Shown piece by piece: positions 40,736-62,316 of a DNA stretch of 64,000 bases; the first letter of the stretch is position 1; every line of letters starts with the position of its first letter. Below the pieces are notes generated by a model. It saw only the letters and a list, made by a program, of their open reading frames with translations, was not told where the DNA came from and ran no database searches. The stretch is from IMG/VR virus record IMGVR_UViG_3300020202_000061, positions 186,001-250,000 of that record; one strand, written 5' to 3'. The translations under genes and the position numbers were made by a program.

Positions 40736-40814
40736 GGGTGGTTGAAGGGAATTGGGTATACCTGCCGGTCTTAGAAGCCGGTGTTTGTGGGTTCGAGTCC
40801 CACACCACCTACCA
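40736..40814 (+). tRNA. tRNA-Leu(TAG), short variable loop
   Basis: GGGTGGT/ACCACCT-A-CCA; CT-TAG-AA. Confidence 0.85.
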
Positions 40815-40830
40815 GACCTCTGGAGGCCGT

Positions 40831-41580
40831 ATGCGTGAATATCCTTTCCGTTACATCGGTCCGTCCATCAATCAGACAGTCTGGTTCGTCCTGTGCCAGA
40901 AAGGCAACCCCCAGGTATTCGAGGGGAAGATCGTCGAGATCGCCGATTACGCGGAGATCGCCCGTAGTCATGGCCATTACAAAGACCCGGTCGAGAACTA
41001 CCTAGTGGATTATTGGGTGGAATCCCCAGACTATTCATTCGGCCATGGTGTGACCTTCGGGAATGAAATCTACGAGACGCGTGAGGAAGCCGAGCGGGTT
41101 GCGGCGGATTGGAAAATTGAGATCAATCTGGTTCTCGATCTCTCTCAAAGGCTCATCGGTGAGCCCAAGCTGACCGGCCAAGACCAACTTGATATGGCCA
41201 AAATCCTTGGCAAGGCTCCGTTGAATGCGGAGTTTGACGGTTATGATCCGGAGACGGGTTGGATCAAATGGTCTACCCAGGCGTATCGTGATTGGGATCA
41301 GAACCAGCGCGAATACTTCGAGAAACATCATGATCTTCCGGATGAGTATCCGCCCGAGAACAGCAGCGGGGAGCATCCCTGCTATCTCAGCAATTTCGAT
41401 GCAATCCGTTCATACCTCCCTATGGGCGGGTGGACCCTGGCACAACCGACCGAATCATATTTCGAGGTCGAGTTGACTTCCACTTTTTCCGCAACACCTT
41501 ATAGGGGAACGAGTACGCAGAGCCCAGCACTGGCACTGTGTAGGGCGATCCTCGCTTATGAGATCGCCCAAATAAACTGA
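40831..41580 (+). CDS. hypothetical protein, possible C-terminal ABA-sandwich-like domain
   Basis: GGAGG RBS; PCYLSNFDA...PALALCRAIL. Confidence 0.6.
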   Translation: MREYPFRYIGPSINQTVWFVLCQKGNPQVFEGKIVEIADYAEIARSHGHYKDPVENYLVDYWVESPDYSFGHGVTFGNEIYETREEAERVAADWKIEINLVLDLSQRLIGEPKLTGQDQLDMAKILGKAPLNAEFDGYDPETGWIKWSTQAYRDWDQNQREYFEKHHDLPDEYPPENSSGEHPCYLSNFDAIRSYLPMGGWTLAQPTESYFEVELTSTFSATPYRGTSTQSPALALCRAILAYEIAQIN

Positions 41581-41589
41581 GGGGATTTC

Positions 41590-42120
41590 ATGGAACTGCT
41601 CGACCCACCTGTCGCTGGCCAAGTCTACGCGGCACAACATCCACATGCGGCAACTGGTGCCGAGAACAAATACACAGTTCTGGCGGTGATTGATGATGTC
41701 GTGATCGTCGAGGATTCCTGGAAGGGTGAAGCCTATCTGGAGGAGCGCCATTGGGAGGCTCCGAAGGTGATGAGTCTCAGCCAATTCAACGCGTGGCCTA
41801 AGACGCTGGTCGAGGACGTGGTTGAATTGGAGCTTGTGGATGATATCACCGATATCGATGACACCGATATCGATGACACCGATGTCGATGACACCAATGT
41901 GAGCGCTGATGACGTTAATCTGTCATCAACATGTTGGGTAGTATCATCGAGCTATGATGAGGCTGAGTTCTGGAGCATTCGTGACGGCGGATACTGGACC
42001 AACGATGTTTCGTCCGCCCTGAAATTCTATTCCGCACAGGACGCGGATGATTATGCGAGGTCTGCTCTGGGCACGCACACACGCTTCGTCATTTCCATGG
42101 TCAATGTTGTTCGTGACTAA
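41590..42120 (+). CDS. acidic hypothetical protein
   Basis: GAGGGG RBS; internal TDIDD repeats. Confidence 0.6.
   Translation: MELLDPPVAGQVYAAQHPHAATGAENKYTVLAVIDDVVIVEDSWKGEAYLEERHWEAPKVMSLSQFNAWPKTLVEDVVELELVDDITDIDDTDIDDTDVDDTNVSADDVNLSSTCWVVSSSYDEAEFWSIRDGGYWTNDVSSALKFYSAQDADDYARSALGTHTRFVISMVNVVRD
41851..41895 (+). repeat. 15-bp tandem repeat x3, in frame
   Basis: GAT(A/G)TCGATGACACC x3. Confidence 0.85.
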
Positions 42121-42404
42121 TGATCAGGAAGATAGTTCTGAGTCCGAATGAGATGGATTTCTTCATGTCAGCCGATCTCGATCCTGCTGAGAAGCAGTTG
42201 TTCGCAATCGTGCTCAAGGCAAATCCTGATGAAATCCTCAAGTTCGAACCCAAGACCTATCGCACGAAGAACTCCAAGACCGGTCGTGTCGTAGACTATT
42301 TCGCATGTTCTTCTGATCGTGCACTTGCCCTGGCCTACATGGACCAGGGATGGCATCACCAAATTGATCTCGTTGATCTTGACACGGAATCGAAAGGCTC
42401 GTAA
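42120..42404 (+). CDS. hypothetical protein
   Basis: TAATG coupling. Confidence 0.55.
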   Translation: MIRKIVLSPNEMDFFMSADLDPAEKQLFAIVLKANPDEILKFEPKTYRTKNSKTGRVVDYFACSSDRALALAYMDQGWHHQIDLVDLDTESKGS

Positions 42405-42437
42405 CTCTGGTAATCGGGGACGAGTTTTGGGGGAAGA

Positions 42438-43064
42438 ATGGAGACCTTGGGGAAGGATGCGTACGAGGACGACGTTGTCGTCCGCGATCTCGCACGCATG
42501 AAGAACCACATCGAGACTGCCGTAATTCTGGGTCGTCTCGAAGAATTCTATGTAGCCACCTGTACCTTTCGTAGTCCCAAACATTTCCAGGGCGAACGTC
42601 GTTGCGTGATGCTGCACGATCACGAACGCGTCGTGGCCATGGTTGGTCTAGGTGATTATCAAAGCGGATTGATCTCTGGCTACGATATTCGTTGGGTGGG
42701 GGTACATCCCGATTTTCGTGGCCGTAGGCTGGCGATGAAACTCTACGTGTTCCTGATCATCAAAACCCGCACACGCCTCTGGAGCGGAAGCCAACAGACA
42801 CCAGACGGGCGTAAGCTGTGGTTGAATCTGTCTCGGGAACCCGGTATTGAAATGCGGGTGATCTCTCCGCGTCACGTTGATCATGTCGTTCCCGGACAGC
42901 ACCGCCTGCATGGCGAGACCCACCCACTCTACAATGGGAAGCTCGCTGAGGACACCCGAATTCTGGCATTTCACCAGGATGATCCTGTAGGAAAGTGGAT
43001 CGATCTGATTCCCACTATCTTCGAGGAACGATCTATTTTACGAAGATTCGAAAAAACCGCTTGA
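42438..43064 (+). CDS. GNAT-fold protein
   Basis: VGVHPDFRGRRLAMKLY; QTPDGRKLW. Confidence 0.75.
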   Translation: METLGKDAYEDDVVVRDLARMKNHIETAVILGRLEEFYVATCTFRSPKHFQGERRCVMLHDHERVVAMVGLGDYQSGLISGYDIRWVGVHPDFRGRRLAMKLYVFLIIKTRTRLWSGSQQTPDGRKLWLNLSREPGIEMRVISPRHVDHVVPGQHRLHGETHPLYNGKLAEDTRILAFHQDDPVGKWIDLIPTIFEERSILRRFEKTA

Positions 43065-43398
43065 CGAGACCTAGGGGTTTCCTATATACGGATCGAGAAG
43101 AGGTGCGGTGGAGCCGAAATGACCGTTGTAACCGGATTGCCGGTGGTCGTTGAGGTGTCGGGCGATGCCCGTGAACATCGATAGCCAAATACAACCCAGG
43201 CACTCCTGGAATGGCCGTAGGTCGCTGAACCTCGTCTCGAAACTGACACCGGACCTAAATAGGTCCTAGAGGAATCTGAGATGACCATTCGATTTTATCA
43301 TTATTTGCTTAGTGAGGGCTGGGGCGGATAACGTATCCCAAATACGTTCACGCGTCTCCGGCCACCCAACGCAAGTTCGGTGGTCTTTTTTTGTATCT

Positions 43399-43474
43399 GC
43401 ACCTTTGGTGAAGCTGGTGCTCACAGCGGTCTGAAAAGCCGAAGAAGTTGGTTCGATTCCAACAGGGTGCACCA
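43399..43474 (+). tRNA. tRNA-Phe(GAA)
   Basis: cloverleaf, CT-GAA-AA, CCA. Confidence 0.9.
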
Positions 43475-43548
43475 AGAAGTTGGGCTTTGCGATAGCCTCT
43501 GGATTGGAGCCAGTGACCGTGGTGACGGTCGAACAAAGTCGCAGCTAT

Positions 43549-43625
43549 GGTGGATATAGTGTACTGGTGTGCACGTCAGGCTGTGAACCTGAAAGGCGAG
43601 GGTTCGATTCCCCGTTTCCACCCCA
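43549..43625 (+). tRNA. tRNA-His(GTG) with G-1 and C73
   Basis: G-GTGGATA/TTTCCAC-C-CCA. Confidence 0.9.
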
Positions 43626-43638
43626 AAGTTTTGAGTAT

Positions 43639-43722
43639 GCACGAGCCGTTCCTTGGAGAGATCAAGTGGCTGTAAACCACCCGGCTTCGCCTGAGTAGGT
43701 TCGAATCCTACCTCGTGCACCA
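43639..43722 (+). tRNA. tRNA-Tyr(GTA)
   Basis: GCACGAG/CTCGTGC-A-CCA; variable arm. Confidence 0.85.
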
Positions 43723-43727
43723 ATTAT

Positions 43728-43818
43728 GGGTTTCCTTCTTCACGGCGGTCTGTAAAACCGCTGGCGCAAAATCGAGTGAAGCGGATGCTGAGAGGTTCGA
43801 CTCCTCGGAAACCCACCA
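43728..43818 (+). tRNA. tRNA-Tyr(GTA)-like, lacking a D hairpin
   Basis: GGGTTTC/GAAACCC-A-CCA; only 9 nt in place of the D arm; 28-nt extra region. Confidence 0.65.
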
Positions 43819-43891
43819 AATATCGCAGGTGATTAGCTCCTGAAATTCTTAAAGGCGGGCCGCCAGGAGTCCCCCGCCGCCTGCACAGAAT

Positions 43892-43975
43892 GCGGTCGTG
43901 GTGTAACGGTAGCCACGCTGGTCTCAGAAGCCAGTGCCGAAAGGCGTGGGAGTTCGACTCTCCCCGGCCGCACCA
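43892..43975 (+). tRNA. tRNA-Leu(CAG)
   Basis: cloverleaf with variable arm, CCA. Confidence 0.92.
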
Positions 43976-44112
43976 ACTTCGGGTCGTTTGGATTGGGTTA
44001 TTGCTCCATAAGCACGAGGGTGTAGGTTCGAATCCTACTCTGCCGACCAATACCGGCAGATAGCATAACGGTAGTGCACGTAAAACATCTGGTCCGCCTT
44101 TTATCCGAAGTT
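43976..44112 (+). ncRNA. YrlA-like Y RNA / circularly permuted tRNA module, copy A
   Basis: CTTCGGGT(C)G/TTATCCGAAG bulged stem; T arm, TCTGCCG-ACCA-ATAC-CGGCAGA, then D arm. Confidence 0.72.
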
Positions 44113-44118
44113 GATTTC

Positions 44119-44200
44119 GCGCCTATGGCGAAACTGGTAGACGCACTGGAATGAGAGTCCAGCGAGTAAAATCATGGAGGTTCGAGTCCTCTTAGGCGCA
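44119..44200 (+). tRNA. tRNA-Leu(GAG), no encoded CCA
   Basis: GCGCCTA/TAGGCGC-A then CTA. Confidence 0.88.
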
Positions 44201-44203
44201 CTA

Positions 44204-44339
44204 AACTCGGGTCGTTAGATTGGGTTATCGTAGCCCGTCCCCATCGTGGGTTCGAATCCCACTACCTGTCGTATGACGGGTATAGCCAAGTGGTTAAGGC
44301 AGGGACTTGTATAAACCAGTCGGCCTTTTTATCCGAGTT
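44204..44339 (+). ncRNA. YrlA-like Y RNA, copy B
   Basis: AACTCGGGT(C)G/TTATCCGAGTT; T arm, acceptor closed by GTAT, D arm, GGGAC/GTCCC stem. Confidence 0.72.
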
Positions 44340-44343
44340 GTTT

Positions 44344-44424
44344 GCCCTGGTGGCGTAATGGTAGCCGCGCTGGATTCAAAACCCAGTGCCGAGAGGCGTG
44401 TCGGTTCGAGTCCGACCTGGGGCA
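44344..44424 (+). tRNA. tRNA-Leu(CAA), no encoded CCA
   Basis: GCCCTGG/CTGGGGC-A then CCC. Confidence 0.88.
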
Positions 44425-44477
44425 CCCAGTTGACAAAATCCTCTGTATCTCTTAGATGAGTGCAGGGGATTATTTTT

Positions 44478-45002
44478 ATGACACGCATTGGCATCTACGC
44501 GGGATCGTTTGATCCACCGACCAATGGTCACCAATGGATGATTCAGGAGGGGGCCAAGCTCTTCGACAATCTGATTGTGGCCATCGGTGTAAACCCGGCG
44601 AAACGCCCCATGTTCAGCGTGGCCGAGCGCAAAGCCATGCTCCAGGACATGTTGGTATGTGATCGATATGGTTTGCAAAACGTCCAGGTAACGACGTTCG
44701 AAAACGAGTTCCTCATCGGCTACGCGCGTGAGATCGGAGCCAACTACATTCTCCGTGGAATCCGTTCGGCCGCCGATTACGAATACGAACACAATATGCG
44801 CAACATCAACGAGGATATTGGCTCGGATTGGCCCGAGCGGAACAGAACCACAGTGTTTTTGATTCCACCGAGGGAGGTCTGTGAGATCAGTTCCAGTACG
44901 GTGAAGGGGTTGATCGGCCCCAATGGTTGGGAGGGCATTGTCGCGAAATATGTGCCGCGCAGTGTTTACGAGATTTTGATCAAAAAATCCAGGGAAGGGT
45001 GA
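44478..45002 (+). CDS. coaD: phosphopantetheine adenylyltransferase
   Basis: GIYAGSFDPPTNGH, LRGIRS..DYEYE, EISSSTVK. Confidence 0.9.
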   Translation: MTRIGIYAGSFDPPTNGHQWMIQEGAKLFDNLIVAIGVNPAKRPMFSVAERKAMLQDMLVCDRYGLQNVQVTTFENEFLIGYAREIGANYILRGIRSAADYEYEHNMRNINEDIGSDWPERNRTTVFLIPPREVCEISSSTVKGLIGPNGWEGIVAKYVPRSVYEILIKKSREG

Positions 45003-45003
45003 A

Positions 45004-45240
45004 ATGGCATTGTTCGTGAGTTACGTCTTGAACACGGCTGGTATCACGCAGCACGAATTTGACTGGCGCGTGATTGATTGTCCGACACCAACTTGCAAGG
45101 AAGAGATCGCAGCGCTCCAATCCAGTCTGAAACAGACCATTTGCGGTGAGCGCGACCGAGCCTGCATCGAACGACGGGGCAATAGTGCTCATGTCTACGG
45201 GCTGACCGTGTTGAATTGGAGAGAGATCGGTGCTGGTTAG
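45004..45240 (+). CDS. hypothetical protein
   Basis: coupled ORF. Confidence 0.5.
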   Translation: MALFVSYVLNTAGITQHEFDWRVIDCPTPTCKEEIAALQSSLKQTICGERDRACIERRGNSAHVYGLTVLNWREIGAG

Positions 45241-45694
45241 TGTTTTCGCGGACGCCTCGTACCATCACGAGTCCCGTGCAGGAGGCTGGGCCGGGTGGGC
45301 GAAGTCCGACCGTGGTTCTCATTATGAGGGGGGTCCGATCCGGACCCCTCTTGCCTCATCAACCGAGGCCGAGTTTCTCGCCGTGGTCAATGCCGTCCAC
45401 ATGTCGATCAAAGCCAAGATCACTGAAAAGCATGATTTCATTCTGATCCAATCTGATTGTCAGTCCGTCGAGCACATCCTGTTCAAACCGAACTATGTGA
45501 TGACCTCCATCATTAAGCGGGCTCGTGCCCATTTGATGGCATTACGATTCGAGCATCAACTCTCCTTCTCATATCGTCATGTCAAGGGTCACTCCTACAA
45601 GAACGAACCCAGATACGCGATAAATCGTCTCTGTGACGGTATAGCCGGTCGAGGTATGGTCCAGGCCCGAACCGCACGGGGATGGCGTAGCTGA
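45230..45694 (+). CDS. RNase HI-like protein
   Basis: FADAS, TEAEFLA, QSDC, HVKGH, NRLCD. Confidence 0.85.
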   Translation: MLVSVFADASYHHESRAGGWAGWAKSDRGSHYEGGPIRTPLASSTEAEFLAVVNAVHMSIKAKITEKHDFILIQSDCQSVEHILFKPNYVMTSIIKRARAHLMALRFEHQLSFSYRHVKGHSYKNEPRYAINRLCDGIAGRGMVQARTARGWRS

Positions 45695-45719
45695 ATAAAT
45701 ATCCCATGGAGGAACCCCC

Positions 45720-46184
45720 ATGGATATCCAACTTAGCCCACACTTTCGTATGTCCGAATTGGTACGTTCGGAGACTGCTGCCCGCCTCGGCCTGGACAAT
45801 TGGCCGCGCGAACCCCGAGTGATTGAAAACCTCCGTAGTACTGCCCTTCACATCCTAGAGCCGATCCGTGTTCAGTTCGGTATTCCCTTCGCACCAAATT
45901 CCGGCTATCGTAGTCCTGAGGTGAACAGGGCTACCGGGGGTTCCAAAACACGGCAACACATGATGGGACAGGCAGTCGATATCGAACTGCCGGGCGTTTC
46001 CAATCACTTATTGGCGGAATGGGTGCGGAAAAATCTACAGTTCGACCAAATCATTCTTGAATGCTATCGTCGCGGAATTCCCAACTCCGGATGGGTTCAT
46101 ATCCGGTACGCAAGCTCTTCGAATCGTCATCAAACTCTGACATTCATTCAGGGTCAGGGATATCTGCCGGGATTTGTTATCTGA
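45720..46184 (+). CDS. peptidase M15A family endolysin-like
   Basis: NSGYRS..VN..GG....QH..GQAVD..WVHI; TAAATA upstream. Confidence 0.88.
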   Translation: MDIQLSPHFRMSELVRSETAARLGLDNWPREPRVIENLRSTALHILEPIRVQFGIPFAPNSGYRSPEVNRATGGSKTRQHMMGQAVDIELPGVSNHLLAEWVRKNLQFDQIILECYRRGIPNSGWVHIRYASSSNRHQTLTFIQGQGYLPGFVI

Positions 46185-52220: not shown

Positions 52221-52296
52221 TGCCCCTTGGCGCAATTGGTAGCGCAGCGGACTCTGAATCCGAAGGTTCCAGGTTCGACCCCTGGAGGGGCAACCA
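52221..52296 (+). tRNA. tRNA-Gln(CTG)
   Basis: TGCCCCT/AGGGGCA-A-CCA; CT-CTG-AA. Confidence 0.92.
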
Positions 52297-52401
52297 AACA
52301 CGGGCCGACTGGCTTGGATTATTGGATGAAGGCTGAGGACGATGACTCCTCTTGCCGCAGGGCTTCGAAACCCTGGTCCAGGTCTCTAACTTGTCCGTGT
52401 T
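52297..52401 (+). ncRNA. Y-RNA-like element E
   Basis: AACACGGGC(C)GA/TTGTCCGTGTT; GGATTATTG; internal TTCGA hairpin. Confidence 0.6.
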
Positions 52402-52406
52402 CTTGA

Positions 52407-52485
52407 TCCAGTGTTGCTCTGTCGGTATGGGCGACCTGCCTCTGAAGCAGGGAATTCGTAGGTTCGACTCCTACCGCTGGAACCA
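52407..52485 (+). tRNA. tRNA-Gln(CTG), second copy
   Basis: TCCAGTG/CGCTGGA-A-CCA. Confidence 0.82.
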
Positions 52486-52499
52486 AATAGTTGCCGTGA

Positions 52500-52582
52500 T
52501 CCAGAGTTGCTCTGTCGGCAAGGGGCCGCTCGGCTTTGAACCGAGATTAGGGACGTAGGTTCGACTCCTACCTCTGGAACCA
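52500..52582 (+). tRNA. tRNA-Gln(TTG)
   Basis: TCCAGAG/CTCTGGA-A-CCA; CT-TTG-AA. Confidence 0.85.
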
Positions 52583-52643: not shown

Positions 52644-54941
52644 ATGTCAGCGATTCGATTCAAGAATTTCTCCCTCCACACCCAGATCATTCAAGCAGCG
52701 CCGACCAAACTGGTCGAGCCCGCGCTGAACCATGTGATCGTGATCGACGTATCTGGATCGATGTATTCGGACCTGCCCGGACTCCGCACCCAACTCAAGA
52801 ACAAGCTGGTGTCGCTGGTCAAGGACCAGGACACGGTGACGATGATCTGGTTCTCCGGCCGTGACCATTACGGTGTCCTGCTGGAGGGAGAGCCCATCCG
52901 CACCCTGACCGACCTCAGTCAGATTCACAAGGCCATTGACCGCTTCTTGGTCCCGCAGGGTCTGACCGGATTCAAGCAGCCCCTGGAGGAAGTCTCCAAG
53001 GTGATCGGCCGCCTCAGCAAGAAGAACAACCACGGCTTCTCCATGTTCTTCATGACCGATGGCTATGACAATCAGTGGGGACAGACAGAGATTCTCAAGG
53101 CTGCGCAGGCGCTGGAATCGCTCCTGGTCAATGCAACGTTCGTCGAGTATGGCTGGAACTGCAACCGTTCACTGATCACCAAGATGGCCGAGACGGTCGG
53201 TGGCAACTACATATTCTCGGAGAATCTCTCGGCGTATCAGGTGATCTTCGAGAAGGAACTCGCCAAGCGCTCGGGTGGTAAGAAGATCGAGGTTCGACTC
53301 AAGACCCCGGCTGCACATGGGTTCGTGTTCGCTCAGGACAAAGACGGCGGCCTGATCACGTTCGCCGTGGAGAACAATTCCGTGCGTGTGCCGGAAAACA
53401 TCCAGGAGATCGCCTATTTCACCCGTACTCGTGATGGCGACAGTCTTGATCCCACCGAGGATGCGGTACACTGGAGCGTCTATGCGGGCCTCGCCGCGCT
53501 ATCCCAGCGCATGATGTCCACGGAAATCTTCGACATCCTGGCGGACCTCGGCGACGTAGCCCTGGTGAACAAGTTCGTAAACTGCTTCTCCAAGCAGGAT
53601 TACTCAGAATTCGAGGCAATGGCCCTGGCTGGGTCTCGCGATTTCGTACACCAGTTCGTCCAGGGTCGCGATCTCAACGCGGTACCGCCGGAGGACGCCT
53701 ACACCGTGCTGGAGGCATTGCGTGATCTCGCCGATGATGACGAGAACCTTCTCTATCTGAACCACGAGGCGTTCGGCTACAAGCGCATCGGCGCGGCTCG
53801 CGTGGACGTGGCCGACACCGTCACGGACAAGGAAATCAATCTGCTCGCGGAGAAGGTCCGCAACGCCAACAAGGCTGATGACCTCAACGCGATCAAGGAT
53901 GAGATTGACGCGCTCCAGGCCAGCAAGGTCAAGCTGGTGTTCGAGAAGCACGACAAAGACGCGGGTGTTCCGGTCAGCAAGCTGGTCTACAACAGCGACC
54001 GCCCGAACGTCAGCATCCTGACCCGCTCTGAGGGGTCGATCAAACTGCCGGAAAATCAGTTCAAGAAGCTGCCGGAACGTATCGATTCGTTCATCTACCG
54101 TAACTACACGATCATCCGCGACGGTATCGTGCATACCCGCGTGCTGCCGGTGAGCCTCGCTAAGGACACATTCGATCTACTCCAGTCCGAGGGACTTCTC
54201 CAGGGTGAGACCTACAAGACTGGTCGGGTCTATGTGCTCGATCTGAGCCCGCTGCCGGTGATCAACCGCCAGATGGTCAAGAGCGTGACCGCGAAAGACC
54301 TCTGCACGAAGCTCTGGAAGCTCCAGCAGTTGAAGGCGGAGCAGAAGGTGTTCAACGACGCGTTCAAGTCGGACTTCGAGCGTGTCTCGGAGAGCTTCGC
54401 CCTGCTCTACGGCGAGGATGCGGCCGATTGGCTGAAAGAGATCGGAATCACCGACTACAACGGGTTCAACCCCAAGACCGTGGCCGGTGCCTTCGACGAT
54501 GTCTACATCGCGAAGATTCTCAAGACCACCATCAAGGGGCTGAGCAGCCTGCCCAAGGTCGAGGAAGTCCGCAAGAAGCTGGCCACCCTTGGCGGGAAGA
54601 ATCCCAGGGATGTCCTGACCATTTCTCAGTGGGTCATGGTGCCCGCATTGGAACGCCTGGACGAGTTCAAGGCGAGCAAGGCATTCCAGTCCAGCAAGAA
54701 CCAGGACGCTCTTCTGGGCACGTGGTTGGACGCGGAGAAGGCCGAGATCACCAAACAGACCCGTGCCCTGATGCTGGAGATCGCGCAGATCAAATTCGCC
54801 GTCGTGGTCGGTCATGTGTGGTTCCAGGACCTGGGATCGCTCGACAACACTACATACGAACTGGACGTGGGCTTCCGCGAGAAGGCCCTGTTCAACCTCC
54901 TGCTGGAGGACAAAGAGATCGGCGGCAAGGACAAAGACTGA
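52644..54941 (+). CDS. N-terminal vWA-domain protein (765 aa)
   Basis: MIDAS DVSGSM, T, FMTDG. Confidence 0.85.
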   Translation: MSAIRFKNFSLHTQIIQAAPTKLVEPALNHVIVIDVSGSMYSDLPGLRTQLKNKLVSLVKDQDTVTMIWFSGRDHYGVLLEGEPIRTLTDLSQIHKAIDRFLVPQGLTGFKQPLEEVSKVIGRLSKKNNHGFSMFFMTDGYDNQWGQTEILKAAQALESLLVNATFVEYGWNCNRSLITKMAETVGGNYIFSENLSAYQVIFEKELAKRSGGKKIEVRLKTPAAHGFVFAQDKDGGLITFAVENNSVRVPENIQEIAYFTRTRDGDSLDPTEDAVHWSVYAGLAALSQRMMSTEIFDILADLGDVALVNKFVNCFSKQDYSEFEAMALAGSRDFVHQFVQGRDLNAVPPEDAYTVLEALRDLADDDENLLYLNHEAFGYKRIGAARVDVADTVTDKEINLLAEKVRNANKADDLNAIKDEIDALQASKVKLVFEKHDKDAGVPVSKLVYNSDRPNVSILTRSEGSIKLPENQFKKLPERIDSFIYRNYTIIRDGIVHTRVLPVSLAKDTFDLLQSEGLLQGETYKTGRVYVLDLSPLPVINRQMVKSVTAKDLCTKLWKLQQLKAEQKVFNDAFKSDFERVSESFALLYGEDAADWLKEIGITDYNGFNPKTVAGAFDDVYIAKILKTTIKGLSSLPKVEEVRKKLATLGGKNPRDVLTISQWVMVPALERLDEFKASKAFQSSKNQDALLGTWLDAEKAEITKQTRALMLEIAQIKFAVVVGHVWFQDLGSLDNTTYELDVGFREKALFNLLLEDKEIGGKDKD

Positions 54942-57224: not shown

Positions 57225-57677
57225 ATGCGTACATCACTGCTTGGACTGATGCTGATCGTGTCCGCCTCGACCCCGGTCCTGGCCGACGAATACGATCACG
57301 AGAAGGCGTTGGTCGCGGTGGGCTTCTCGACGTTGGTCGGGAACGACTCAGTCACCTGGGACACCCAGGATGGATTTGGCCGCTCGATTACCGAGGTCAC
57401 AATCACGGAGCCGAACGGACGTGAGTGCACCTATGTGAGTGTTGATCTCTACCCGAGCAATCCCGGCTACATGAACGCAGCTTGCCGCCGGGACAACACC
57501 CAGGATTGGATCGTCAACGAAGCCTACAAGATGGACGTGCAGGAATTACCTGCACCACAGCCGTTGTGCCGTCAAGTCAGGGTCAGCATGATCGGCGTGG
57601 CCACAGGCCTTCTGACCCGCATTGGCACGTTTTGCCAAAACAGTCAGGGTGTGTGGAATCTCCAGGAAATCCGATAA
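57225..57677 (+). CDS. exported protein with 17-kDa-antigen-like C-terminal repeats
   Basis: signal peptide; C......AC....W twice. Confidence 0.65.
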   Translation: MRTSLLGLMLIVSASTPVLADEYDHEKALVAVGFSTLVGNDSVTWDTQDGFGRSITEVTITEPNGRECTYVSVDLYPSNPGYMNAACRRDNTQDWIVNEAYKMDVQELPAPQPLCRQVRVSMIGVATGLLTRIGTFCQNSQGVWNLQEIR

Positions 57678-57719
57678 TTTCCCTTGACAAACCCCGGAGT
57701 TTCCTGTAGACTCCGAGGT

Positions 57720-58394
57720 ATGGAAAATAGCCGCTTCGCCTCCGTCGATCAGTATCTCGCCGCCCTCATCCGGGCTTGGCCCACCCTGTTCGCGAGCCGC
57801 GAGGATGCGCTCCTGCGGGTGGCCACTCAGTCCTGGAACGACAAGACGGGTTGTCCCTATCGGGAGGATGATGACTCCGAGAAGGACCTGAGCCAGACTT
57901 TTGAAGAGATTCTGGCCGAAAAGCGCGGCAAGCTCGGCGGCCGTGATCGCTCGACGCTGATGGATAGCTTCGATCATCGCATGGCCCTGGAACGGATGCG
58001 CGAGAACCACGACGCGCTGTTCACCCGCAACAACGCCGATCTGATCGCCACGCTGGAGGGCGAGTTCACGTCTCCGCCCAATCTGTCCATCTACAATGTC
58101 AATCGTTGGCCTGCTACCATGACTCCGGCCTGGAAGGCTGCGATGGTCGAACTGGCCGACCGCATCCTGGAATACCGGGATGTTCAGGTGGACAAGCACA
58201 CGGAGAGTCCGATCAGTCGTGATCAGTATCGTGCCGGTCTGAAAGAGGCTCAGGCGGCGGCTCGTGAAATCCTCGCCCGGTTCGCGCCGGAGCGCTTCAC
58301 CCAGGCACAGAAGCAGGAGCGCGATCAGGAAGTCCAGAAGCTGCGCTATGCGGCCGAGGCGCTCGGCTACAAGCTGACCCCGGTACAGCAGTAA
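57720..58394 (+). CDS. hypothetical protein
   Basis: promoter at 57684 and GAGG RBS. Confidence 0.65.
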   Translation: MENSRFASVDQYLAALIRAWPTLFASREDALLRVATQSWNDKTGCPYREDDDSEKDLSQTFEEILAEKRGKLGGRDRSTLMDSFDHRMALERMRENHDALFTRNNADLIATLEGEFTSPPNLSIYNVNRWPATMTPAWKAAMVELADRILEYRDVQVDKHTESPISRDQYRAGLKEAQAAAREILARFAPERFTQAQKQERDQEVQKLRYAAEALGYKLTPVQQ

Positions 58395-58711
58395 TGCACA
58401 AGACAGCCGAACAACTCCGTGACAGCCACCCCGCGACCTTTCGACGATTGCTGGAGGCGAGCACCCACACCACACGGATAATTCGAGCGGCTTTGGATAA
58501 GGGAATGTCTGGTCCTTCTTTGATGGACCCCGAATACGCGAAATGGTCAACCATCGAGAACCGCATGGGTGATCGGCTCTACGTCAAGGCGATCAAGCTG
58601 CCGTTGGCCGAAGCCAAGCGGTTCATCGCGTTCTTCCCACCCTGCGTGGAGCGGGCCTTCCTTGCGGATTGGGTCCGGCAACAGGAGAAGGCGAATGAAA
58701 ACCGCCAGTGA
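58394..58711 (+). CDS. hypothetical protein
   Basis: TAATG coupling; paralog-like to 58695..59000. Confidence 0.55.
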   Translation: MHKTAEQLRDSHPATFRRLLEASTHTTRIIRAALDKGMSGPSLMDPEYAKWSTIENRMGDRLYVKAIKLPLAEAKRFIAFFPPCVERAFLADWVRQQEKANENRQ

Positions 58712-59000
58712 ATTTCTTTCGGTGTATCAGACCGATCTGGACACAATGCGTCGTCAGACGAATGTGATGAACCAGATCATCGCCGACTACGAGGCGCTGG
58801 GTCAGGTTGAGCTTCCGGCAGACGATCCCCGATATCGAGCCGCATTCAAGACAAAGCTCCGTCTCGGAAAGGAACTCTTGGCCGAGATCAAGCGACTCCC
58901 GCTGGATGAGGCGATCATCGTCTACAACCATTTCCCTCATGGCGCACACCGGTCGTTTCTGCGGACGTGGATCGCCGATCAGGGAGTTCTGGTCCAATGA
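58695..59000 (+). CDS. hypothetical protein
   Basis: shares IKxLPL.EA...FP....R.FL..WI with the upstream gene. Confidence 0.55.
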   Translation: MKTASEFLSVYQTDLDTMRRQTNVMNQIIADYEALGQVELPADDPRYRAAFKTKLRLGKELLAEIKRLPLDEAIIVYNHFPHGAHRSFLRTWIADQGVLVQ

Positions 59001-59305
59001 AGCAGATCGAGATCATTCCCATTCAACATGGGATTCCGTGCCAACCAGGGAACGCCACAGCATTTCGCTTGGACGTGTTCGGGATGTACGTCGGGAATTT
59101 TTCGACCGAGTCAGAAGCACAGGAAACGGCTGACAATCTGGTCGCCGGAGTGTTTCCGTCGAATTTCTCACGGGAGTTTATCGACCTGTTTCTGAACAAC
59201 AAGAAGGTCTGGCAGGACCAGGAAACAGAACGACTCGCCGATATCCGTTCCGACGCGGATTGGGAGGAATTATTGTGGAATTCCTCAACGGGAGCCCCGG
59301 AATGA
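58997..59305 (+). CDS. hypothetical protein
   Basis: ATGA coupling. Confidence 0.5.
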   Translation: MKQIEIIPIQHGIPCQPGNATAFRLDVFGMYVGNFSTESEAQETADNLVAGVFPSNFSREFIDLFLNNKKVWQDQETERLADIRSDADWEELLWNSSTGAPE

Positions 59306-59568
59306 CCCGCGATTTCCAAAAGTTTCACAACAGCCTCCGCATCATGTACAGCCTCGATTTGGCTGATCTGGTCGAGGCTGACGTGCTCCCGAAGCATGAG
59401 GATGGCAGTTTCAACACGCTCGGCGTGATCCTCTCCTACGAGCAGTTCCACCAGAACCCGATGGGTTGGCTGGTTCAGACCGCCTCCGATGAACAGGTCG
59501 AACGTCTCTGGAACTTGATTGAGTCCCGTCAACCTAACAATCTCAAGGGGGAAGCCAATGTCTCATAA
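59302..59568 (+). CDS. hypothetical protein
   Basis: ATGA coupling. Confidence 0.5.
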   Translation: MTRDFQKFHNSLRIMYSLDLADLVEADVLPKHEDGSFNTLGVILSYEQFHQNPMGWLVQTASDEQVERLWNLIESRQPNNLKGEANVS

Positions 59569-59770
59569 CGGCCATCTGACCGTGCTGTGCGAGGTCGAGC
59601 GCTACTTTCAGCGCACTCGCTGTGTCTCGATCATGCCGGTCCCGCACCCGACTCGTGTTGGCGCGAAGGTGATCCAGGACGAGATCGAGTGGATCGTTAC
59701 TCGCATCATCAATCCGACGCCGATGACGCCGTTCGAGGCAGCGGCGGCCGACGCCCATGCCCACTCTTGA
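59558..59770 (+). CDS. hypothetical protein
   Basis: GGGGGA RBS. Confidence 0.45.
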   Translation: MSHNGHLTVLCEVERYFQRTRCVSIMPVPHPTRVGAKVIQDEIEWIVTRIINPTPMTPFEAAAADAHAHS

Positions 59771-59957
59771 TCAGACCTACCTCCTGTGTGACGTGGCCTG
59801 GAACCACTTGAAGGCTCGCACCTACATCCGCCAGCGTGAGGCGGTGCCGGGAGAAAAAGGGATCAACTTCTTCGGCACCATGTGGGATGTGGTTGCGGTG
59901 GTCGATCCAAATCCGATCACTGAGGAACAACTGAGGCACCAATACTATGGATACTGA
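59757..59957 (+). CDS. hypothetical protein
   Basis: overlapping series. Confidence 0.45.
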   Translation: MPTLDQTYLLCDVAWNHLKARTYIRQREAVPGEKGINFFGTMWDVVAVVDPNPITEEQLRHQYYGY

Positions 59958-60171
59958 GCCACAACGGATCATCCGCCGTGTCATTGCTGGTTTCTTGTTC
60001 GGGAAACCACAGATGGAGATCGCCTGTTCTGATCCCTGCTGCGAGTACCAGCTTGGTGCATATGACCAGGACGAGGAACGGCATCGTGAGGGCAACCCCC
60101 ACTACCAGGGACTCTGTCTGAATCATATCGACGATCAGCGCCGGGCCGACGAGGAAGTCTATTGGCTATGA
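59947..60171 (+). CDS. hypothetical Cys-containing protein
   Basis: GAGG RBS. Confidence 0.5.
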   Translation: MDTEPQRIIRRVIAGFLFGKPQMEIACSDPCCEYQLGAYDQDEERHREGNPHYQGLCLNHIDDQRRADEEVYWL

Positions 60172-60458
60172 GCAAGACCTCCTACGTGATCCACGTGAAC
60201 CGGCAGGTCATCGCGTTCAACGCGAAGCACGGGAAGCCTCTCCTGCCTCCGTATATCGTCCGCAGGGGCTCGAAGCCCTCGGTCTACGGGTTCGGTGTGG
60301 AGATCACCGGCAAGACCATCCTGGTCGATCCTAGGCGGCACAAGCCTCTGAAATGTGGTGCTCGCGCCTGGATCGCATGTGATGGACCCGTAAAGATCAC
60401 CGATCCGATGAGTTTCCGGGAGGTTGAAGCCCTTCGGAAGAAGCACGAGTCCGCGTAA
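60168..60458 (+). CDS. hypothetical protein
   Basis: IHVNRQVI..N...KPLKCGARAWI pattern. Confidence 0.65.
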   Translation: MSKTSYVIHVNRQVIAFNAKHGKPLLPPYIVRRGSKPSVYGFGVEITGKTILVDPRRHKPLKCGARAWIACDGPVKITDPMSFREVEALRKKHESA

Positions 60459-60512
60459 ATACCGTGGTATTTTTTCCTGGATCGGCCAGGAAAACCATGG
60501 TATAATACGCGC

Positions 60513-61028
60513 ATGAGGCGATCTCTAACCACTGCCATAGCACTGGTTCTTGGCTTCCAGGCAATCACCGCCGATCTGGCGAGCGCCGCTGCCAATACAC
60601 CTATCCAGGTCAATTGGGGTGCCGTCGAGTTCTATGGTCAGAATCACGACCAGATGTCTCAGGGAGAGATCAAACCAGCCCAAATTGAACCCCAATTGAT
60701 TGCTGCCGCCCAGGACGTGTTGAATCGGAGGGGCATCTACATTCCCGAACCGAATGGTCGGGACAAATGGAAGATTTCCTGGATCGGTGACTGTGAGGAT
60801 CAGGCTCTGGCAGTGATGAAGTGGCTGAACCAGAAGGGTGTACCGTTGGAGGCGATGAGGATCGTCTATACCCCGCCCACGAAGAAGCGCTTGGGCCACG
60901 CCATGCTATGCATCTGGGACGCCGAACGCGGTCCGATCTGCATCGACAGCCTGAGCAAAACTCCGACCTTTCTCAAGGATAAGCCCGGCAAGTGGTTTGA
61001 GGCTCTCTCGAACAAACGCGTGAAATAA
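60513..61028 (+). CDS. transglutaminase-like cysteine protease (BTLCP-like), exported
   Basis: signal peptide; GDCEDQA...GHAML...ID. Confidence 0.8.
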   Translation: MRRSLTTAIALVLGFQAITADLASAAANTPIQVNWGAVEFYGQNHDQMSQGEIKPAQIEPQLIAAAQDVLNRRGIYIPEPNGRDKWKISWIGDCEDQALAVMKWLNQKGVPLEAMRIVYTPPTKKRLGHAMLCIWDAERGPICIDSLSKTPTFLKDKPGKWFEALSNKRVK

Positions 61029-61097
61029 TTCACTACCTCGTAAAAACCTCTTGACTTCCCTAGGATGCCCCGCTAAATACCCGTTACCAACTTCGTT

Positions 61098-61174
61098 GGG
61101 CGCGTAGAGGAGAGGCCGTCCTCGGCACCCTGTCACGGTGCATATCGCGGGTTCGAATCCCGTCGCGCTCGCCA
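61098..61174 (+). tRNA. tRNA-Asp(GTC)
   Basis: cloverleaf, G73, CCA. Confidence 0.92.
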
Positions 61175-61255
61175 ACGAGGGCCGAACTGAATCGGATTAT
61201 TGTTCTTCCAAAACAAGAGGGATAGCATCCCACCGGTTCTCAAATTTGCCCTCGT
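61175..61255 (+). ncRNA. minimal Y-RNA-like element F
   Basis: ACGAGGGC(C)GAA/TTTGCCCTCGT; GGATTATTG. Confidence 0.62.
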
Positions 61256-61261
61256 GATTTT

Positions 61262-61339
61262 CTGGGTGTAGCTCAGCTTGGTTAGAGTGTCGTGTTCGGA
61301 ACGCGAAGGTCGGAGGTTCAAATCCTCTCACCCAGACCA
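61262..61339 (+). tRNA. tRNA-Pro(CGG)
   Basis: CTGGGTG/CACCCAG-A-CCA; TT-CGG-AA. Confidence 0.92.
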
Positions 61340-61344
61340 GTTTT

Positions 61345-61572
61345 AGTAGGAATCTGCGGGTTCATGTCCCCGAGTGTTGACATGATGGCGGCTGGTAGCC
61401 GAGGCAATGAGATTCATGCAACCACCCTTCGGGGTGTATCTCAGGCCGGTTCTCGGACCTAAACCGAGTGGTGGAAGGAGCGCGAGGACGTGCGAATCTC
61501 GCCCCCGGTTCCCGGACCTAAACCGGGTGGAGACGGTGATCCGTTGGGCGTGCCGGTGCCCTAGTACCGGCG
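61345..61572 (+). ncRNA. unassigned structured RNA with twin ACCUAAA hairpins
   Basis: CTCGG-ACCTAAA-CCGAG and CCCGG-ACCTAAA-CCGGG. Confidence 0.5.
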
Positions 61573-61576
61573 ATTT

Positions 61577-61653
61577 CAGGGTGTAGCTCAGCTTGGTTAG
61601 AGTGCCGTGTCGGGAACGCGGAGGCCGGTGGTTCAAATCCACTCATCCTGACC
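61577..61653 (+). tRNA. tRNA-Pro(GGG)
   Basis: CAGGGTG/CATCCTG-A-CCA; TC-GGG-AA. Confidence 0.88.
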
Positions 61654-61829
61654 AATTAGATCACCTGGATAGGTGGCCCATGAGGGACCGATTCCAGATG
61701 ATATCCACGCCTGCGGTTTACCGTAGGCCCCGGCGGGCAGAGGAAACTCTGGCCCGCCGTTTTCATTAGGGCTTTCTTCACGACCGGTGGCTTACCATCT
61801 ATCCAGTAAATATTCTGGGGGAAACCACC

Positions 61830-62075
61830 ATGAATGAGATCGTCGATCTAAAGCGTCGTGCCGGAATCCACAAAATATCTCGGTTGGATAATCCCGAGGG
61901 GTATCTCCAGGCGGTGCTCGATGCGAAATTGGAACTGGACGACTTCAAGAAGTCTATCCAGCATCTGACCTGGACGCCCGAGTTGGAAGCGAAATTCACC
62001 GAGGTATTCGCGTTCATGGATCAGGCCCTAAAATCGGGGATTGAACAAGCCACGAATCGTCGTCGTAACTCTTGA
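61830..62075 (+). CDS. late protein with KRRAGI motif
   Basis: TAAATA upstream; MNEIVDLKRRAGI. Confidence 0.65.
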   Translation: MNEIVDLKRRAGIHKISRLDNPEGYLQAVLDAKLELDDFKKSIQHLTWTPELEAKFTEVFAFMDQALKSGIEQATNRRRNS

Positions 62076-62110
62076 CATTCCCTCTGATCTGTCCTAAGTA
62101 GGATGTTGAT

Positions 62111-62232
62111 GACGGGTCGTTAGAATTGGGTTATTGTTGCCTTGATAGCAAACGAGTGGGTTCGATTCCCACGCATCCTCGGAAGAGGGTGTCCTTGGCG
62201 GTAGTTCTAGTCCGGTTCGCCTCTTATCCGTC
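62111..62232 (+). ncRNA. YrlA-like Y RNA, copy C
   Basis: GACGGGT(C)G/TTATCCGTC; TGGGTTATTG; T arm then looped acceptor-like stem; promoter at 62072. Confidence 0.68.
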
Positions 62233-62238
62233 TTCTTT

Positions 62239-62316
62239 CTGGGATTAGCTCAGTCAGGTTAGAGTGTCGGTTTTGGAAGCCGAAGGTCGAGGGTTCAAAT
62301 CCCTCATCCCAGACCA
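62239..62316 (+). tRNA. tRNA-Pro(TGG)
   Basis: CTGGGAT/ATCCCAG-A-CCA; TT-TGG-AA. Confidence 0.92.

What the first reader, a model, noticed from the sequence alone, without database searches (positions are those of the whole stretch)
40736..62316. All G36 tRNAs for CNN codons have A37 instead of G37
Seen: Pro(CGG) TT-CGG-AA, Pro(GGG) TC-GGG-AA (also C33), Pro(TGG) TT-TGG-AA, Leu(TAG), Leu(CAG), Leu(GAG), His(GTG), the three Gln tRNAs and the CCG tRNA all have A at 37. Knowledge: bacterial tRNA-Pro and the CUN-reading tRNA-Leu normally carry m1G37 made by TrmD, which suppresses +1 frameshifting (A37 is ordinary for E. coli His and Gln). Inference: systematic TrmD/SAM independence or evasion of host anticodon nucleases. 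It could also change frameshifting at CCC-N sites.
Basis: partly seen in the sequence, partly recalled or inferred. Interest (0 to 1): 0.68.

Follow-up and report, generated by a model that had tools for sequence, protein, structure and literature searches.

The report
Phage tRNAs that skip m1G37
A huge phage encodes proline, leucine and CCG-anticodon tRNAs with A instead of the near-universal G next to the anticodon, so they cannot take and may not need the essential host methylation m1G37; I found the same swap to be common in phage tRNAs and rare in cellular ones.

Summary
All 30 tRNAs in the window have A37. That includes the seven that match the E. coli TrmD substrate set: Pro CGG/GGG/UGG, Leu UAG/CAG/GAG and the CCG tRNA.

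A close relative keeps A37 in 5 of 5 such tRNAs although their anticodon stems differ. A more distant relative keeps it in 2 of 3.

The trait is not unique to this phage:
- In 230 IMG/VR tRNA clusters, A37 fractions run from 17% (Pro UGG) to 86% (Leu CAG).
- Cellular controls show about 3-7%.
- Phage T5 Leu(UAG) also has A37.
- A complete set is rare: 1 of 46 clusters with three or more such tRNAs, and the independence product is about 1e-3.

The window also encodes a T3-type SAM-lyase domain protein, a divergent MetK, a CCA-adding enzyme and an RNase P RNA.

Best reading, with confidence about 0.45: A37 is hard-wired to bypass TrmD and SAM for tRNAs made during infection. Evasion of anticodon nucleases and lineage inheritance are not excluded. 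The host is unknown. I found no paper that describes this bypass.

The parts
4845..4934 (+). tRNA with anticodon CCG and A37 (loop CT-CCG-AC). It is 90 nt with a long variable arm and G73, so the body looks like tRNA-Ser and its amino-acid identity is uncertain.
   Evidence: Rfam 51.8 bits; 69% identical to the window's tRNA-Ser(GCU); none of 35 other viral Arg(CCG) tRNAs has a long arm
40736..40814 (+). tRNA with anticodon UAG (Leu codon CUA/CUG) and A37. It is 79 nt with no long variable arm and has A73.
   Evidence: Rfam 38.4 bits
43550..43625 (+). tRNA-His(GUG) with A37, which the finding itself states is ordinary for E. coli His.
43892..43975 (+). tRNA-Leu(CAG) with A37 (CT-CAG-AA). Long variable arm, A73.
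44119..44201 (+). tRNA-Leu(GAG) with A37 (AT-GAG-AG). It is the only tRNA in the window without an encoded CCA end.
52221..52582 (+). Three tRNA-Gln genes (CUG, CUG, UUG), all with A37, which the finding itself states is ordinary for E. coli Gln.
61262..61339 (+). tRNA-Pro(CGG) with A37 (TT-CGG-AA). C1:G72 and A73.
   Evidence: (62.5 bits)
61577..61654 (+). tRNA-Pro(GGG) with A37 and C33 (TC-GGG-AA).
   Evidence: 55.7 bits; C33 and A37 are conserved in L002
62239..62316 (+). tRNA-Pro(UGG) with A37 (TT-TGG-AA).
   Evidence: 69.7 bits
30919..31956 (-). 345-aa protein whose C-terminal ~150 aa form a T3-type SAM-lyase (S-AdoMet_lyase) domain. This is context for the SAM-independence reading.
   Evidence: Pfam PF23780, 33-36 bits, above the cut-off; 37 of 38 homologues match the family; the family profile hits T3 SAM lyase chains 7ock_L/8bb1 at E=4e-6; AF2 model pLDDT 85.7 with top three Foldseek hits T3 SAMase, prob 0.99-1.0, TM about 0.5; called as a gene independently in two assemblies
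28554..29657 (+). Phage-encoded S-adenosylmethionine synthetase (MetK), full length and at most 47% identical to any cellular MetK listed.
   Evidence: (E=4e-83 to solved MetK structures)
39252..40499 (+). tRNA nucleotidyltransferase (CCA-adding enzyme).
   Evidence: Pfam PolyA_pol, E=7e-33; 34-37% identical to the tRNA nucleotidyltransferases of jumbo phages of Alphaproteobacteria
10428..10778 (+). Bacterial class-A RNase P RNA, covering the full model. It is part of the phage's own kit for maturing tRNAs.
   Evidence: Rfam RF00010, 146.6 bits, gathering score 100

Best explanation
These are working tRNA genes of a huge phage (contig at least 347-401 kb). In them the nucleotide that cells keep as G37, and must methylate to m1G37 with TrmD and SAM, is hard-coded as A.

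Shown:
- The seven tRNA species that are TrmD substrates in E. coli all have A37 here.
- They therefore lack the G36-G37 motif that TrmD needs.

Inferred:
- An adenine at 37 supplies the stacking purine 3' of the anticodon without the Watson-Crick face of an unmethylated G, which pairs with C and favours +1 slippage. The tRNAs would then be usable straight after transcription.
- This matters for a phage because all its tRNAs are made during infection. At that point host TrmD capacity cannot be raised, and in this phage SAM is probably being destroyed by its own T3-type SAM-lyase domain protein.
- From established knowledge, m1G37 is the SAM-dependent tRNA methylation that bacteria generally cannot lose. 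Fixing position 37 would therefore be enough.
- The swap fits a wider self-sufficiency for tRNA maturation: an RNase P RNA, a CCA-adding enzyme, and CCA encoded in 29 of 30 tRNA genes.
For: - All 30 tRNAs have A37, including all seven TrmD-set tRNAs. All seven have good cloverleafs and Rfam scores.
- The set equals the published E. coli TrmD substrate list. TrmD needs G36-G37 and SAM.
- A37 is conserved while the stems diverge. Relative L002 (VWA protein 89% identical) has A37 in Pro CGG/GGG/UGG and Leu GAG/CAG, with different anticodon stems that still pair.
- The window's Pro genes belong to a D-arm type found in other viral contigs as 19 distinct UGG/CGG sequences. These have 13 different anticodon stems and 69-94% pairwise identity, and all have A37. 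Bacterial tRNA-Pro with the same D-arm has G37 in 112 of 116 cases.
- There is a bias specific to phages. In the first 163 IMG/VR tRNA clusters, 107 of 283 TrmD-set tRNAs have A37, against 4 of 124 in bacterial genome loci (Fisher p=2e-15). For CUN-Leu with one variable-arm pattern the figures are 41 of 74 against 6 of 89 in metagenome contigs (p=4e-12).
- In those clusters G37 is rare in tRNAs with C36 (1.2%) or U36 (0.7%), and reaches 7.3% with A36, so G36 tRNAs are the main place where the two purines alternate.
- SAM context: a SAM-lyase domain gene and metK lie 1.3 kb apart in the window, and both are conserved at 85-88% in a sister phage.
- Apart from position 37, the loops in the window mostly keep the usual Y32-U33 and A37-A/C38 form.
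Against: - The phage also carries an intact-looking metK, which argues against a cell starved of SAM, unless the two genes act at different times or the lyase domain mainly inhibits host MetK.
- A more distant relative (L402) keeps a canonical G37 Leu(UAG). Methylation by TrmD is evidently still usable in that lineage.
- Across phages, tRNA-Pro is the family that depends most on m1G37, yet it is the least often A37: 17% for UGG against 52-86% for Leu UAG/CAG. This may reflect a ProRS constraint, because ProRS senses position 37. It fits a target-specific pressure equally well.
- Activity of the SAM-lyase domain is untested, and the Foldseek E-values are weak (0.01).
- Only 64 kb, plus a few kb beyond, of a genome of 401 kb or more was seen. 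A phage trmD or G37 tRNAs elsewhere are not excluded.
- The host and its tRNAs are unknown.
Confidence: 0.45

Rival explanations
1. Evasion of anticodon nucleases. Host toxins or defence nucleases recognise the G36-(m1)G37 context of particular Leu, Pro or Arg tRNAs, and the G37A change makes the phage copies uncleavable, so phage translation continues after host tRNAs are cut.
For: - Published hypothesis for phage tRNAs in general (PMC10264068).
- Its supplementary table lists mycobacteriophage Leu(CAG) and Leu(GAG) variants whose loops read A37, next to variants with G37.
- The strong dependence on anticodon across phages (CAG 86%, UAG 52%, UGG 17%) is what pressure on specific targets would give.
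- The window has an RNA-repair-type HAD_SAK_2 domain gene, so damage to tRNAs is a plausible concern for this phage.
Against: - No nuclease is known to me that uses G37 or m1G37 of all seven species as its determinant.
- Here the change is uniform across seven tRNAs of three families and is confined to position 37. The other loop positions are mostly unremarkable.
- The paper does not discuss position 37, TrmD or m1G.
Confidence: 0.25
2. Tolerated drift plus inheritance. Phage tRNAs only supplement the host pool, so G37A is nearly neutral. It arose a few times and spread by gene duplication and anticodon switching, and nothing is being selected.
For: - The three Pro genes are 76-87% identical paralogues, so one event explains three cases.
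- A37 and G37 coexist in many phage clusters: 18 of 35 loci are mixed.
- The distant relative has one G37 Leu(UAG).
Against: - A37 is invariant across 19 divergent viral Pro(UGG/CGG) sequences with 13 different stems, while bacterial tRNAs of the same type have G37.
- The gap between phage and cellular tRNAs is very large.
- The all-A37 state is rare (1 of 46 clusters; product about 1e-3).
- An origin by remoulding of UUR-Leu tRNAs is not supported: 31 of 42 A37 YAG-Leu bodies are closer to G37 CUN-Leu tRNAs.
Confidence: 0.17
3. Host mimicry. The unknown host itself uses A37 in these tRNAs, and the phage genes simply copy the host state.
For: A native chromosomal tRNA-Pro(CGG) with A37 exists in Acetobacteraceae and other Alphaproteobacteria. 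It is identical in four genomes and lies between an MFS transporter gene and an amidase gene in the two genomes examined. Arg(CCG) with A37 is also common in viral loci with few tRNAs, some of which may be host genes at prophage ends.
Against: - In Acidocella the neighbouring Pro(GGG) has G37.
- 120 of 124 bacterial tRNAs of these families have G37, and 83 of 89 metagenome CUN-Leu tRNAs do.
- The window's Pro genes are no closer to the Acetobacteraceae gene than to G37 bacterial ones (61-63 matches either way).
- trmD deletion is lethal or severely harmful in the bacteria tested.
Confidence: 0.08
4. Tuned frameshifting. A37 tRNA-Pro changes +1 slippage at CCC-N sites so that particular phage proteins are expressed.
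For: The state of position 37 controls +1 frameshifting by tRNA-Pro. CCC is a frequent Pro codon in the window's genes (88 of 287), and a dedicated Pro(GGG) tRNA with an unusual C33 is present.
Against: I did not identify a candidate frameshift site. The idea does not explain A37 in the Leu and CCG tRNAs. By established reasoning an A at 37 should reduce pairing with C, not increase it.
Confidence: 0.04

Closest known systems
Bacterial TrmD-substrate tRNAs: Pro (all isoacceptors), Leu(CUN) and Arg(CCG), carrying m1G37
   Same: The anticodons are the same seven. Pro has the bacterial identity features C1:G72, A73, G35 and G36. The Leu tRNAs have A73. The cloverleafs are ordinary.
   Different: Position 37 is A, so the G36-G37 motif that defines a TrmD substrate is missing. 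In addition, the UAG tRNA lacks the long variable arm and the CCG tRNA has one.
Phage tRNAs with anticodon-loop substitutions proposed to evade anticodon nucleases (van den Berg et al., eLife 2023, PMC10264068)
   Same: Both concern phage-encoded tRNA arrays whose anticodon loops differ from the cellular norm at conserved positions. Some mycobacteriophage Leu(CAG/GAG) variants in that paper's table also read A37.
   Different: That work argues from cleavage sites of known VapC, MazF or colicin nucleases in known hosts, and it does not mention position 37, m1G or TrmD. Here the change is uniform, confined to position 37, and covers the whole TrmD set.
Phage T5 tRNA cluster
   Same: T5 tRNA-Leu(UAG) has A37 (CT-TAG-AT), and the T5 set is otherwise almost all A37.
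   Different: T5 tRNA-Pro(UGG) keeps G37 (TT-TGG-GG). The replacement in T5 is partial.
T3 SAM lyase with host MetK (PDB 7OCK, 8BB1)
   Same: The C-terminal domain of ORF 30919-31956 matches the same Pfam family, and its family profile and predicted fold match T3 SAM lyase.
   Different: It is a 345-aa protein with an uncharacterised N-terminal half of about 190 aa. It sits in a tRNA-rich huge phage next to the phage's own metK. Its activity is untested.

Membership tests
TrmD substrate tRNA | G at position 36 | tested here: met
   All seven anticodons end in G.
TrmD substrate tRNA | G at position 37, which accepts the methyl group (G36-G37 motif; PMC13602947) | tested here: not met
   A37 in all seven. 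They are therefore not TrmD substrates.
Bacterial-type tRNA-Pro | Anticodon NGG, C1:G72 pair, A73 discriminator (identity set recalled from established knowledge) | tested here: met
   The sequences of the three Pro genes start with C, pair it with G72 and have A73 before CCA. Rfam scores are 55.7-69.7 bits.
Bacterial-type tRNA-Leu (type II) | Long variable arm and A73 | tested here: inconclusive
   Leu(CAG) and Leu(GAG) have both. The UAG tRNA (79 nt) has A73 but only a 4-nt variable loop. Such short tRNAs with Leu anticodons are frequent in phage clusters. Charging was not tested.
Nuclease-evading phage tRNAs (van den Berg 2023) | Encoded by a phage | tested here: met
   The contig is IMG/VR UViG_3300020202_000061. 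Gene content is typical of a huge phage. No structural gene lies in the window.
Nuclease-evading phage tRNAs (van den Berg 2023) | The substitution lies in the cleavage or recognition site of an anticodon nuclease of the host | not testable with these tools
   The host and its nucleases are unknown.
Nuclease-evading phage tRNAs (van den Berg 2023) | The anticodon loop differs from that of the host's cognate tRNA | tested here: inconclusive
   It differs from the bacterial norm, but the actual host's tRNAs were not available.
S-AdoMet_lyase (T3 SAMase / Svi3-3 type) | Sequence membership in Pfam PF23780 | tested here: met
   33.1-35.6 bits against a cut-off of 28; 37 of 38 homologues match.
S-AdoMet_lyase (T3 SAMase / Svi3-3 type) | Fold like a solved SAM lyase | tested here: met
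   The profile hits 7ock_L/8bb1 at E=4e-6. The top three Foldseek hits are T3 SAMase chains, prob 0.99-1.0, TM about 0.5, E about 0.01.
S-AdoMet_lyase (T3 SAMase / Svi3-3 type) | Cleaves SAM and/or inhibits host MetK | not testable with these tools
   This needs an enzyme assay.

The most novel reading that the evidence does not exclude
Replacing G37 by A37 is a general, selected strategy by which phages free their own tRNAs from the one SAM-dependent tRNA methylation that bacteria generally cannot lose. This phage is the complete case: it degrades SAM or blocks host MetK with a T3-type lyase, yet translates with a full set of tRNAs that need no methylation and that it can process itself (RNase P RNA, CCA enzyme). 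If so, A37 can functionally replace m1G37, and the reason cells retain G37 (regulation, or gatekeeping by ProRS) becomes directly testable.
Probability: 0.3. Interest if true: 0.8.

Novelty: new variant of a known kind. Interest (0 to 1): 0.62.

Why it matters
m1G37 made by TrmD is described as near-universal and essential, and TrmD is an antibiotic target. A natural, complete set of Pro, Leu and CCG-anticodon tRNAs with A37 would be a ready-made experiment, as would the strong excess of A37 in phage tRNAs over cellular ones measured here. Both bear on three questions: whether an unmethylated A can do the job of m1G, why cells nevertheless keep G37, and what phage tRNAs are for. If the SAM link holds, it adds a rule for phages that attack the host SAM pool: their own tRNAs must not depend on SAM. 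It also bears on the design of orthogonal or modification-independent tRNAs.

Tried and rejected
- No close relative among isolate phages. Megablast of 24 kb of the window against isolate phages found no match, and so did tblastn of the 666-aa ORF.
- The CCA enzyme gives only about 35% identity to jumbo phages of Alphaproteobacteria. The 41-kb region around that gene in CcrColossus holds no tRNA, so it gave no comparison.
- The search for related loci with the VWA protein and with the protein next to the Pro cluster found only the window's own contig in IMG/VR.
- Two VWA homologues at about 50% identity (L005, L006) lie in unrelated contexts without tRNAs.
- Host inference failed. MetK is at most 47% identical to cellular MetKs from scattered phyla. 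VWA homologues in Burkholderia and Methylophilaceae are only 45-49% identical.
- The idea that the window's Pro genes derive from the Acetobacteraceae A37 tRNA-Pro(CGG) was rejected. They are equally similar to G37 bacterial genes.
- The idea that A37 CUN-Leu tRNAs arise by anticodon switching from UUR-Leu tRNAs (A36 to G) was rejected for phages in general.
- The class-II synthetase-like ORF (14680-15429) is GlyRS-like, not ProRS-like, so it does not explain charging of A37 tRNA-Pro.
- The SAM-lyase ORF gave no PDB hit as a single sequence and no tblastn hit in isolate phages. Only the family profile and the fold search linked it to T3 SAMase.
- The test of whether CGG is read as Ser by the long-arm CCG tRNA was uninformative. 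There is no CGG codon in metK and one in the VWA gene, at a column where homologues have Lys.
- Literature searches found no paper that links phage tRNAs to TrmD or A37. Björk et al. 2001 (PMC140193) is not held.

Full report
**What is there.** The window is positions 186001-250000 of IMG/VR contig UViG_3300020202_000061, which is 347,504 bp. The same genome also occurs as a 401,308-bp contig in an ENA assembly. G+C is about 55%. ARAGORN finds 30 tRNA genes, all on the + strand and scattered between short ORFs. Rfam confirms 25 of them, including all seven discussed below, above the curated threshold. I extracted the seven-nucleotide anticodon loop of each gene. Position 37 is A in 30 of 30.

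Eleven tRNAs have G36. The finding itself states, as background, that A37 is ordinary for E. coli His and Gln. It is not ordinary for the other seven: Pro(CGG), Pro(GGG), Pro(UGG), Leu(UAG), Leu(CAG), Leu(GAG) and the CCG tRNA. These seven are exactly the published TrmD substrate set of E. coli (10.1101/2021.07.14.452415). The CCG tRNA lies at 4845-4934, outside the coordinates given in the finding. Each loop is closed by a regular 5-bp stem, so the register is not in doubt.

**Relatives.** A Logan contig (L002) encodes a VWA protein 89% identical to the window's, and it has the same gene order.
- Its Pro CGG/GGG/UGG and Leu GAG/CAG all have A37, although several anticodon stems differ and still pair. 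For example, the Pro(UGG) stem is tcggt/gccga in the window and ccacg/cgtgg in L002.
- A more distant syntenic relative (L402, VWA 56% identical) has A37 in Leu(CAG) and Leu(GAG), but it keeps a canonical 85-nt Leu(UAG) with G37.
- So the trait is conserved in the near clade and is not absolute further out.

**How unusual is it?** I drew samples that do not depend on position 37.
- A D-arm motif shared by the window's Pro genes retrieved 37 IMG/VR loci. Apart from an identical, usually solitary tRNA-Pro(GGG) with G37, probably a host gene at prophage ends, the hits were 19 distinct Pro(UGG/CGG) sequences. They have 13 different anticodon stems and 69-94% pairwise identity, and all have A37.
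- The same motif in 120 bacterial genome loci gave tRNA-Pro with G37 in 112 of 116 cases.
- Four motif scans of IMG/VR that leave position 37 free to be A or G gave 230 loci with four or more tRNAs. The A37 fractions were: Pro UGG 26/150, Pro CGG 10/32, Pro GGG 4/20, Leu UAG 68/132, Leu CAG 18/21, Leu GAG 10/36, Arg CCG 12/17.
- The Leu motif run on metagenome contigs, which are mostly cellular, gave A37 in 6 of 89 CUN-Leu tRNAs. In viral clusters the same motif gave 41 of 74 (Fisher p=4e-12).
- In the first 163 phage clusters, G37 is rare in tRNAs with C36 (1.2%) or U36 (0.7%), and reaches 7.3% with A36. G36 tRNAs are therefore the main place where the two purines alternate.
- Phage T5 shows the partial state: Leu(UAG) has A37 and Pro(UGG) has G37. 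So do the published mycobacteriophage C1 tRNAs.

**What these samples mean.** A37 in these tRNA families is a widespread phage trait that is rare in cells. What is unusual about this phage is that the replacement is complete.
- The product of the per-anticodon fractions is about 9e-4.
- Only 1 of 46 clusters with three or more such tRNAs is all A37.
- 9 of 85 clusters with ten or more tRNAs contain no G37 at all, and each of those has only one or two TrmD-set tRNAs.
The three Pro genes here are paralogues.

**Context in the window.** Pfam scans of about 95 ORFs found no tRNA methyltransferase. They did find the following:
- A full-length MetK at 28554-29657. It matches solved MetK structures at E=4e-83 and is at most 47% identical to any cellular MetK listed.
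- A 345-aa protein 1.3 kb downstream on the opposite strand, whose C-terminal domain belongs to the S-AdoMet_lyase family. A profile of its homologues hits T3 SAM lyase chains 7OCK/8BB1 at E=4e-6. An AlphaFold model (pLDDT 85.7) has T3 SAMase as its top three Foldseek matches, with prob 0.99-1.0, TM about 0.5 and weak E-values. The gene was called independently in two assemblies. Both this gene and metK are conserved at 85-88% identity in a sister phage.
- A CCA-adding enzyme, a bacterial class-A RNase P RNA at 146.6 bits, an RNA-repair-type HAD domain, RNase H, a 3'-5' exoribonuclease-like protein, Macro and NUDIX domains.
- A GlyRS-like catalytic core next to the two tRNA-Gly genes.
- In addition, 29 of the 30 tRNA genes encode their CCA end.

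**How it most likely works.**
- Shown: these tRNAs lack G37. TrmD methylates G37 in a G36-G37 motif using SAM, so they cannot be its substrates.
- From the literature: loss of m1G37 causes +1 frameshifting and poor charging of tRNA-Pro, and trmD is essential or nearly so in the bacteria tested.
- Inferred: an A at 37 keeps the stacking purine without the pairing face of an unmethylated G, so the tRNA is usable without modification.
- Inferred: the benefit is specific to phages. Every phage tRNA is made during infection, when TrmD cannot be increased and, in this phage, SAM is probably being removed or host MetK blocked by the lyase-domain protein. Host tRNAs made before infection are already methylated.
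- I give this reading about 0.45.

**Points against this reading.**
- The phage's own metK argues against a cell starved of SAM.
- The distant relative has a G37 Leu(UAG).
- Across phages, Pro depends most on m1G37 yet is the least often A37. Sensing of position 37 by ProRS could explain that, but so could pressure on specific targets.

**Rival explanations.**
- Evasion of anticodon nucleases (PMC10264068) fits the dependence on anticodon and cannot be tested without the host. I give it about 0.25.
- Tolerated drift with inheritance through paralogues gets about 0.17. It is weakened by the invariance of A37 across divergent viral Pro genes and by the contrast between phage and cellular tRNAs.
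- Host mimicry gets about 0.08. I found one native bacterial case, an identical tRNA-Pro(CGG) with A37 in four Alphaproteobacteria/Acetobacteraceae genomes, flanked by an MFS transporter gene and an amidase gene in the two examined. The neighbouring Pro(GGG) there has G37, and the window's genes are not specifically related to it.
- Tuned +1 frameshifting gets about 0.04.
- An origin of A37 Leu(YAG) tRNAs by anticodon switching from UUR-Leu tRNAs is not supported.

**Comparison with what is known, and novelty.**
- These genes work like Pro, Leu and CGG-decoding tRNAs, but they fail the defining test of a TrmD substrate, which is G37.
- They fit the known category of phage tRNAs with altered anticodon loops. 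The published account of that category does not mention position 37, m1G or TrmD.
- Six literature searches found no paper that links phage tRNAs to a TrmD bypass. A 2026 review notes only that some phage Leu tRNAs do carry m1G37.
- I therefore rate it a new variant of a known kind. The single-gene fact has been visible in T5 for decades. The complete replacement, the quantified excess in phage over cellular tRNAs, and the co-occurrence with a SAM-lyase domain gene appear to be undescribed.

**Verdict.**
- The mechanism is inferred, not shown.
- Interest is 0.62.

Noticed in passing
window 10428-10778 (+): A full-length bacterial class-A RNase P RNA (Rfam RF00010, 146.6 bits, gathering score 100) is encoded inside the phage contig, between two ORFs. 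One literature search found no report of a phage-encoded RNase P RNA.
   Followed up: partly
window 4845-4934 (+): The CCG-anticodon tRNA is 90 nt long with a long variable arm, G73 and a GGAA...UUCC acceptor stem like tRNA-Ser. It might insert Ser at CGG codons. None of 35 other viral Arg(CCG) tRNAs sampled has a long arm. CGG is absent from metK and occurs once in the VWA gene, so the codon test was uninformative.
   Followed up: partly
window 32699-32776 (+): There is an amber-suppressor-type tRNA (anticodon CUA, Rfam 53.1 bits). Among 22 ORFs taken as likely genes, TAG is the stop codon only once (TGA 15, TAA 6). Possible TAG recoding was not examined.
   Followed up: no
window 40736-40814; L402 6372-6541: These are tRNAs with Leu anticodons but no long variable arm (78-79 nt, D-arm GAAGGGAATTGGTATACC). 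The window has UAG and the distant relative has CAG and GAG. Such short 'Leu' tRNAs are frequent in IMG/VR clusters, for example 28 of 62 CAA and 17 of 110 UAG. Their amino-acid identity is untested.
   Followed up: partly
window 61577-61654; L002 17313-17388: tRNA-Pro(GGG) has C33 instead of the near-universal U33, and this is conserved in the close relative. C33 also occurs in some other viral Pro(CGG/GGG) tRNAs and in half (12 of 23) of the viral Val(GAC) tRNAs sampled.
   Followed up: partly
L044 4717-4794, L106, L123 4530-4607 (Acidocella aquatica NBRC 112502), L157; also viral L042: A native chromosomal tRNA-Pro(CGG) with A37 is identical in four Alphaproteobacteria/Acetobacteraceae genomes. 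In the two examined it lies between an MFS transporter gene and an Amidase_3 gene. It is a cellular exception to the G37 rule. The same sequence sits near the end of one viral contig, where it may be an attachment site.
   Followed up: partly
window 14680-15429 (+): A 249-aa stand-alone class-II aminoacyl-tRNA-synthetase catalytic core is most similar to GlyRS (PDB 8u2q, E=6e-8). It lies between tRNA-Arg(CCU) and the two tRNA-Gly genes.
   Followed up: partly
window 28554-31956: A divergent metK and a gene with a T3-type SAM-lyase domain lie 1.3 kb apart on opposite strands, and both are conserved in a sister phage. An enzyme that makes SAM next to one that destroys it, or that inhibits MetK, is unexplained.
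   Followed up: partly
window 44119-44201: 29 of the 30 tRNA genes encode their 3' CCA. Only Leu(GAG) does not, and a CCA-adding enzyme is encoded at 39252-40499.
   Followed up: yes
window 52644-54941 (+): The 765-aa VWA-domain protein has hundreds of 45-50% identical homologues of the same length in Burkholderia, Paraburkholderia and Methylophilaceae genomes and in metagenomes. Its function is unknown. It may be a weak hint at the host.
   Followed up: no
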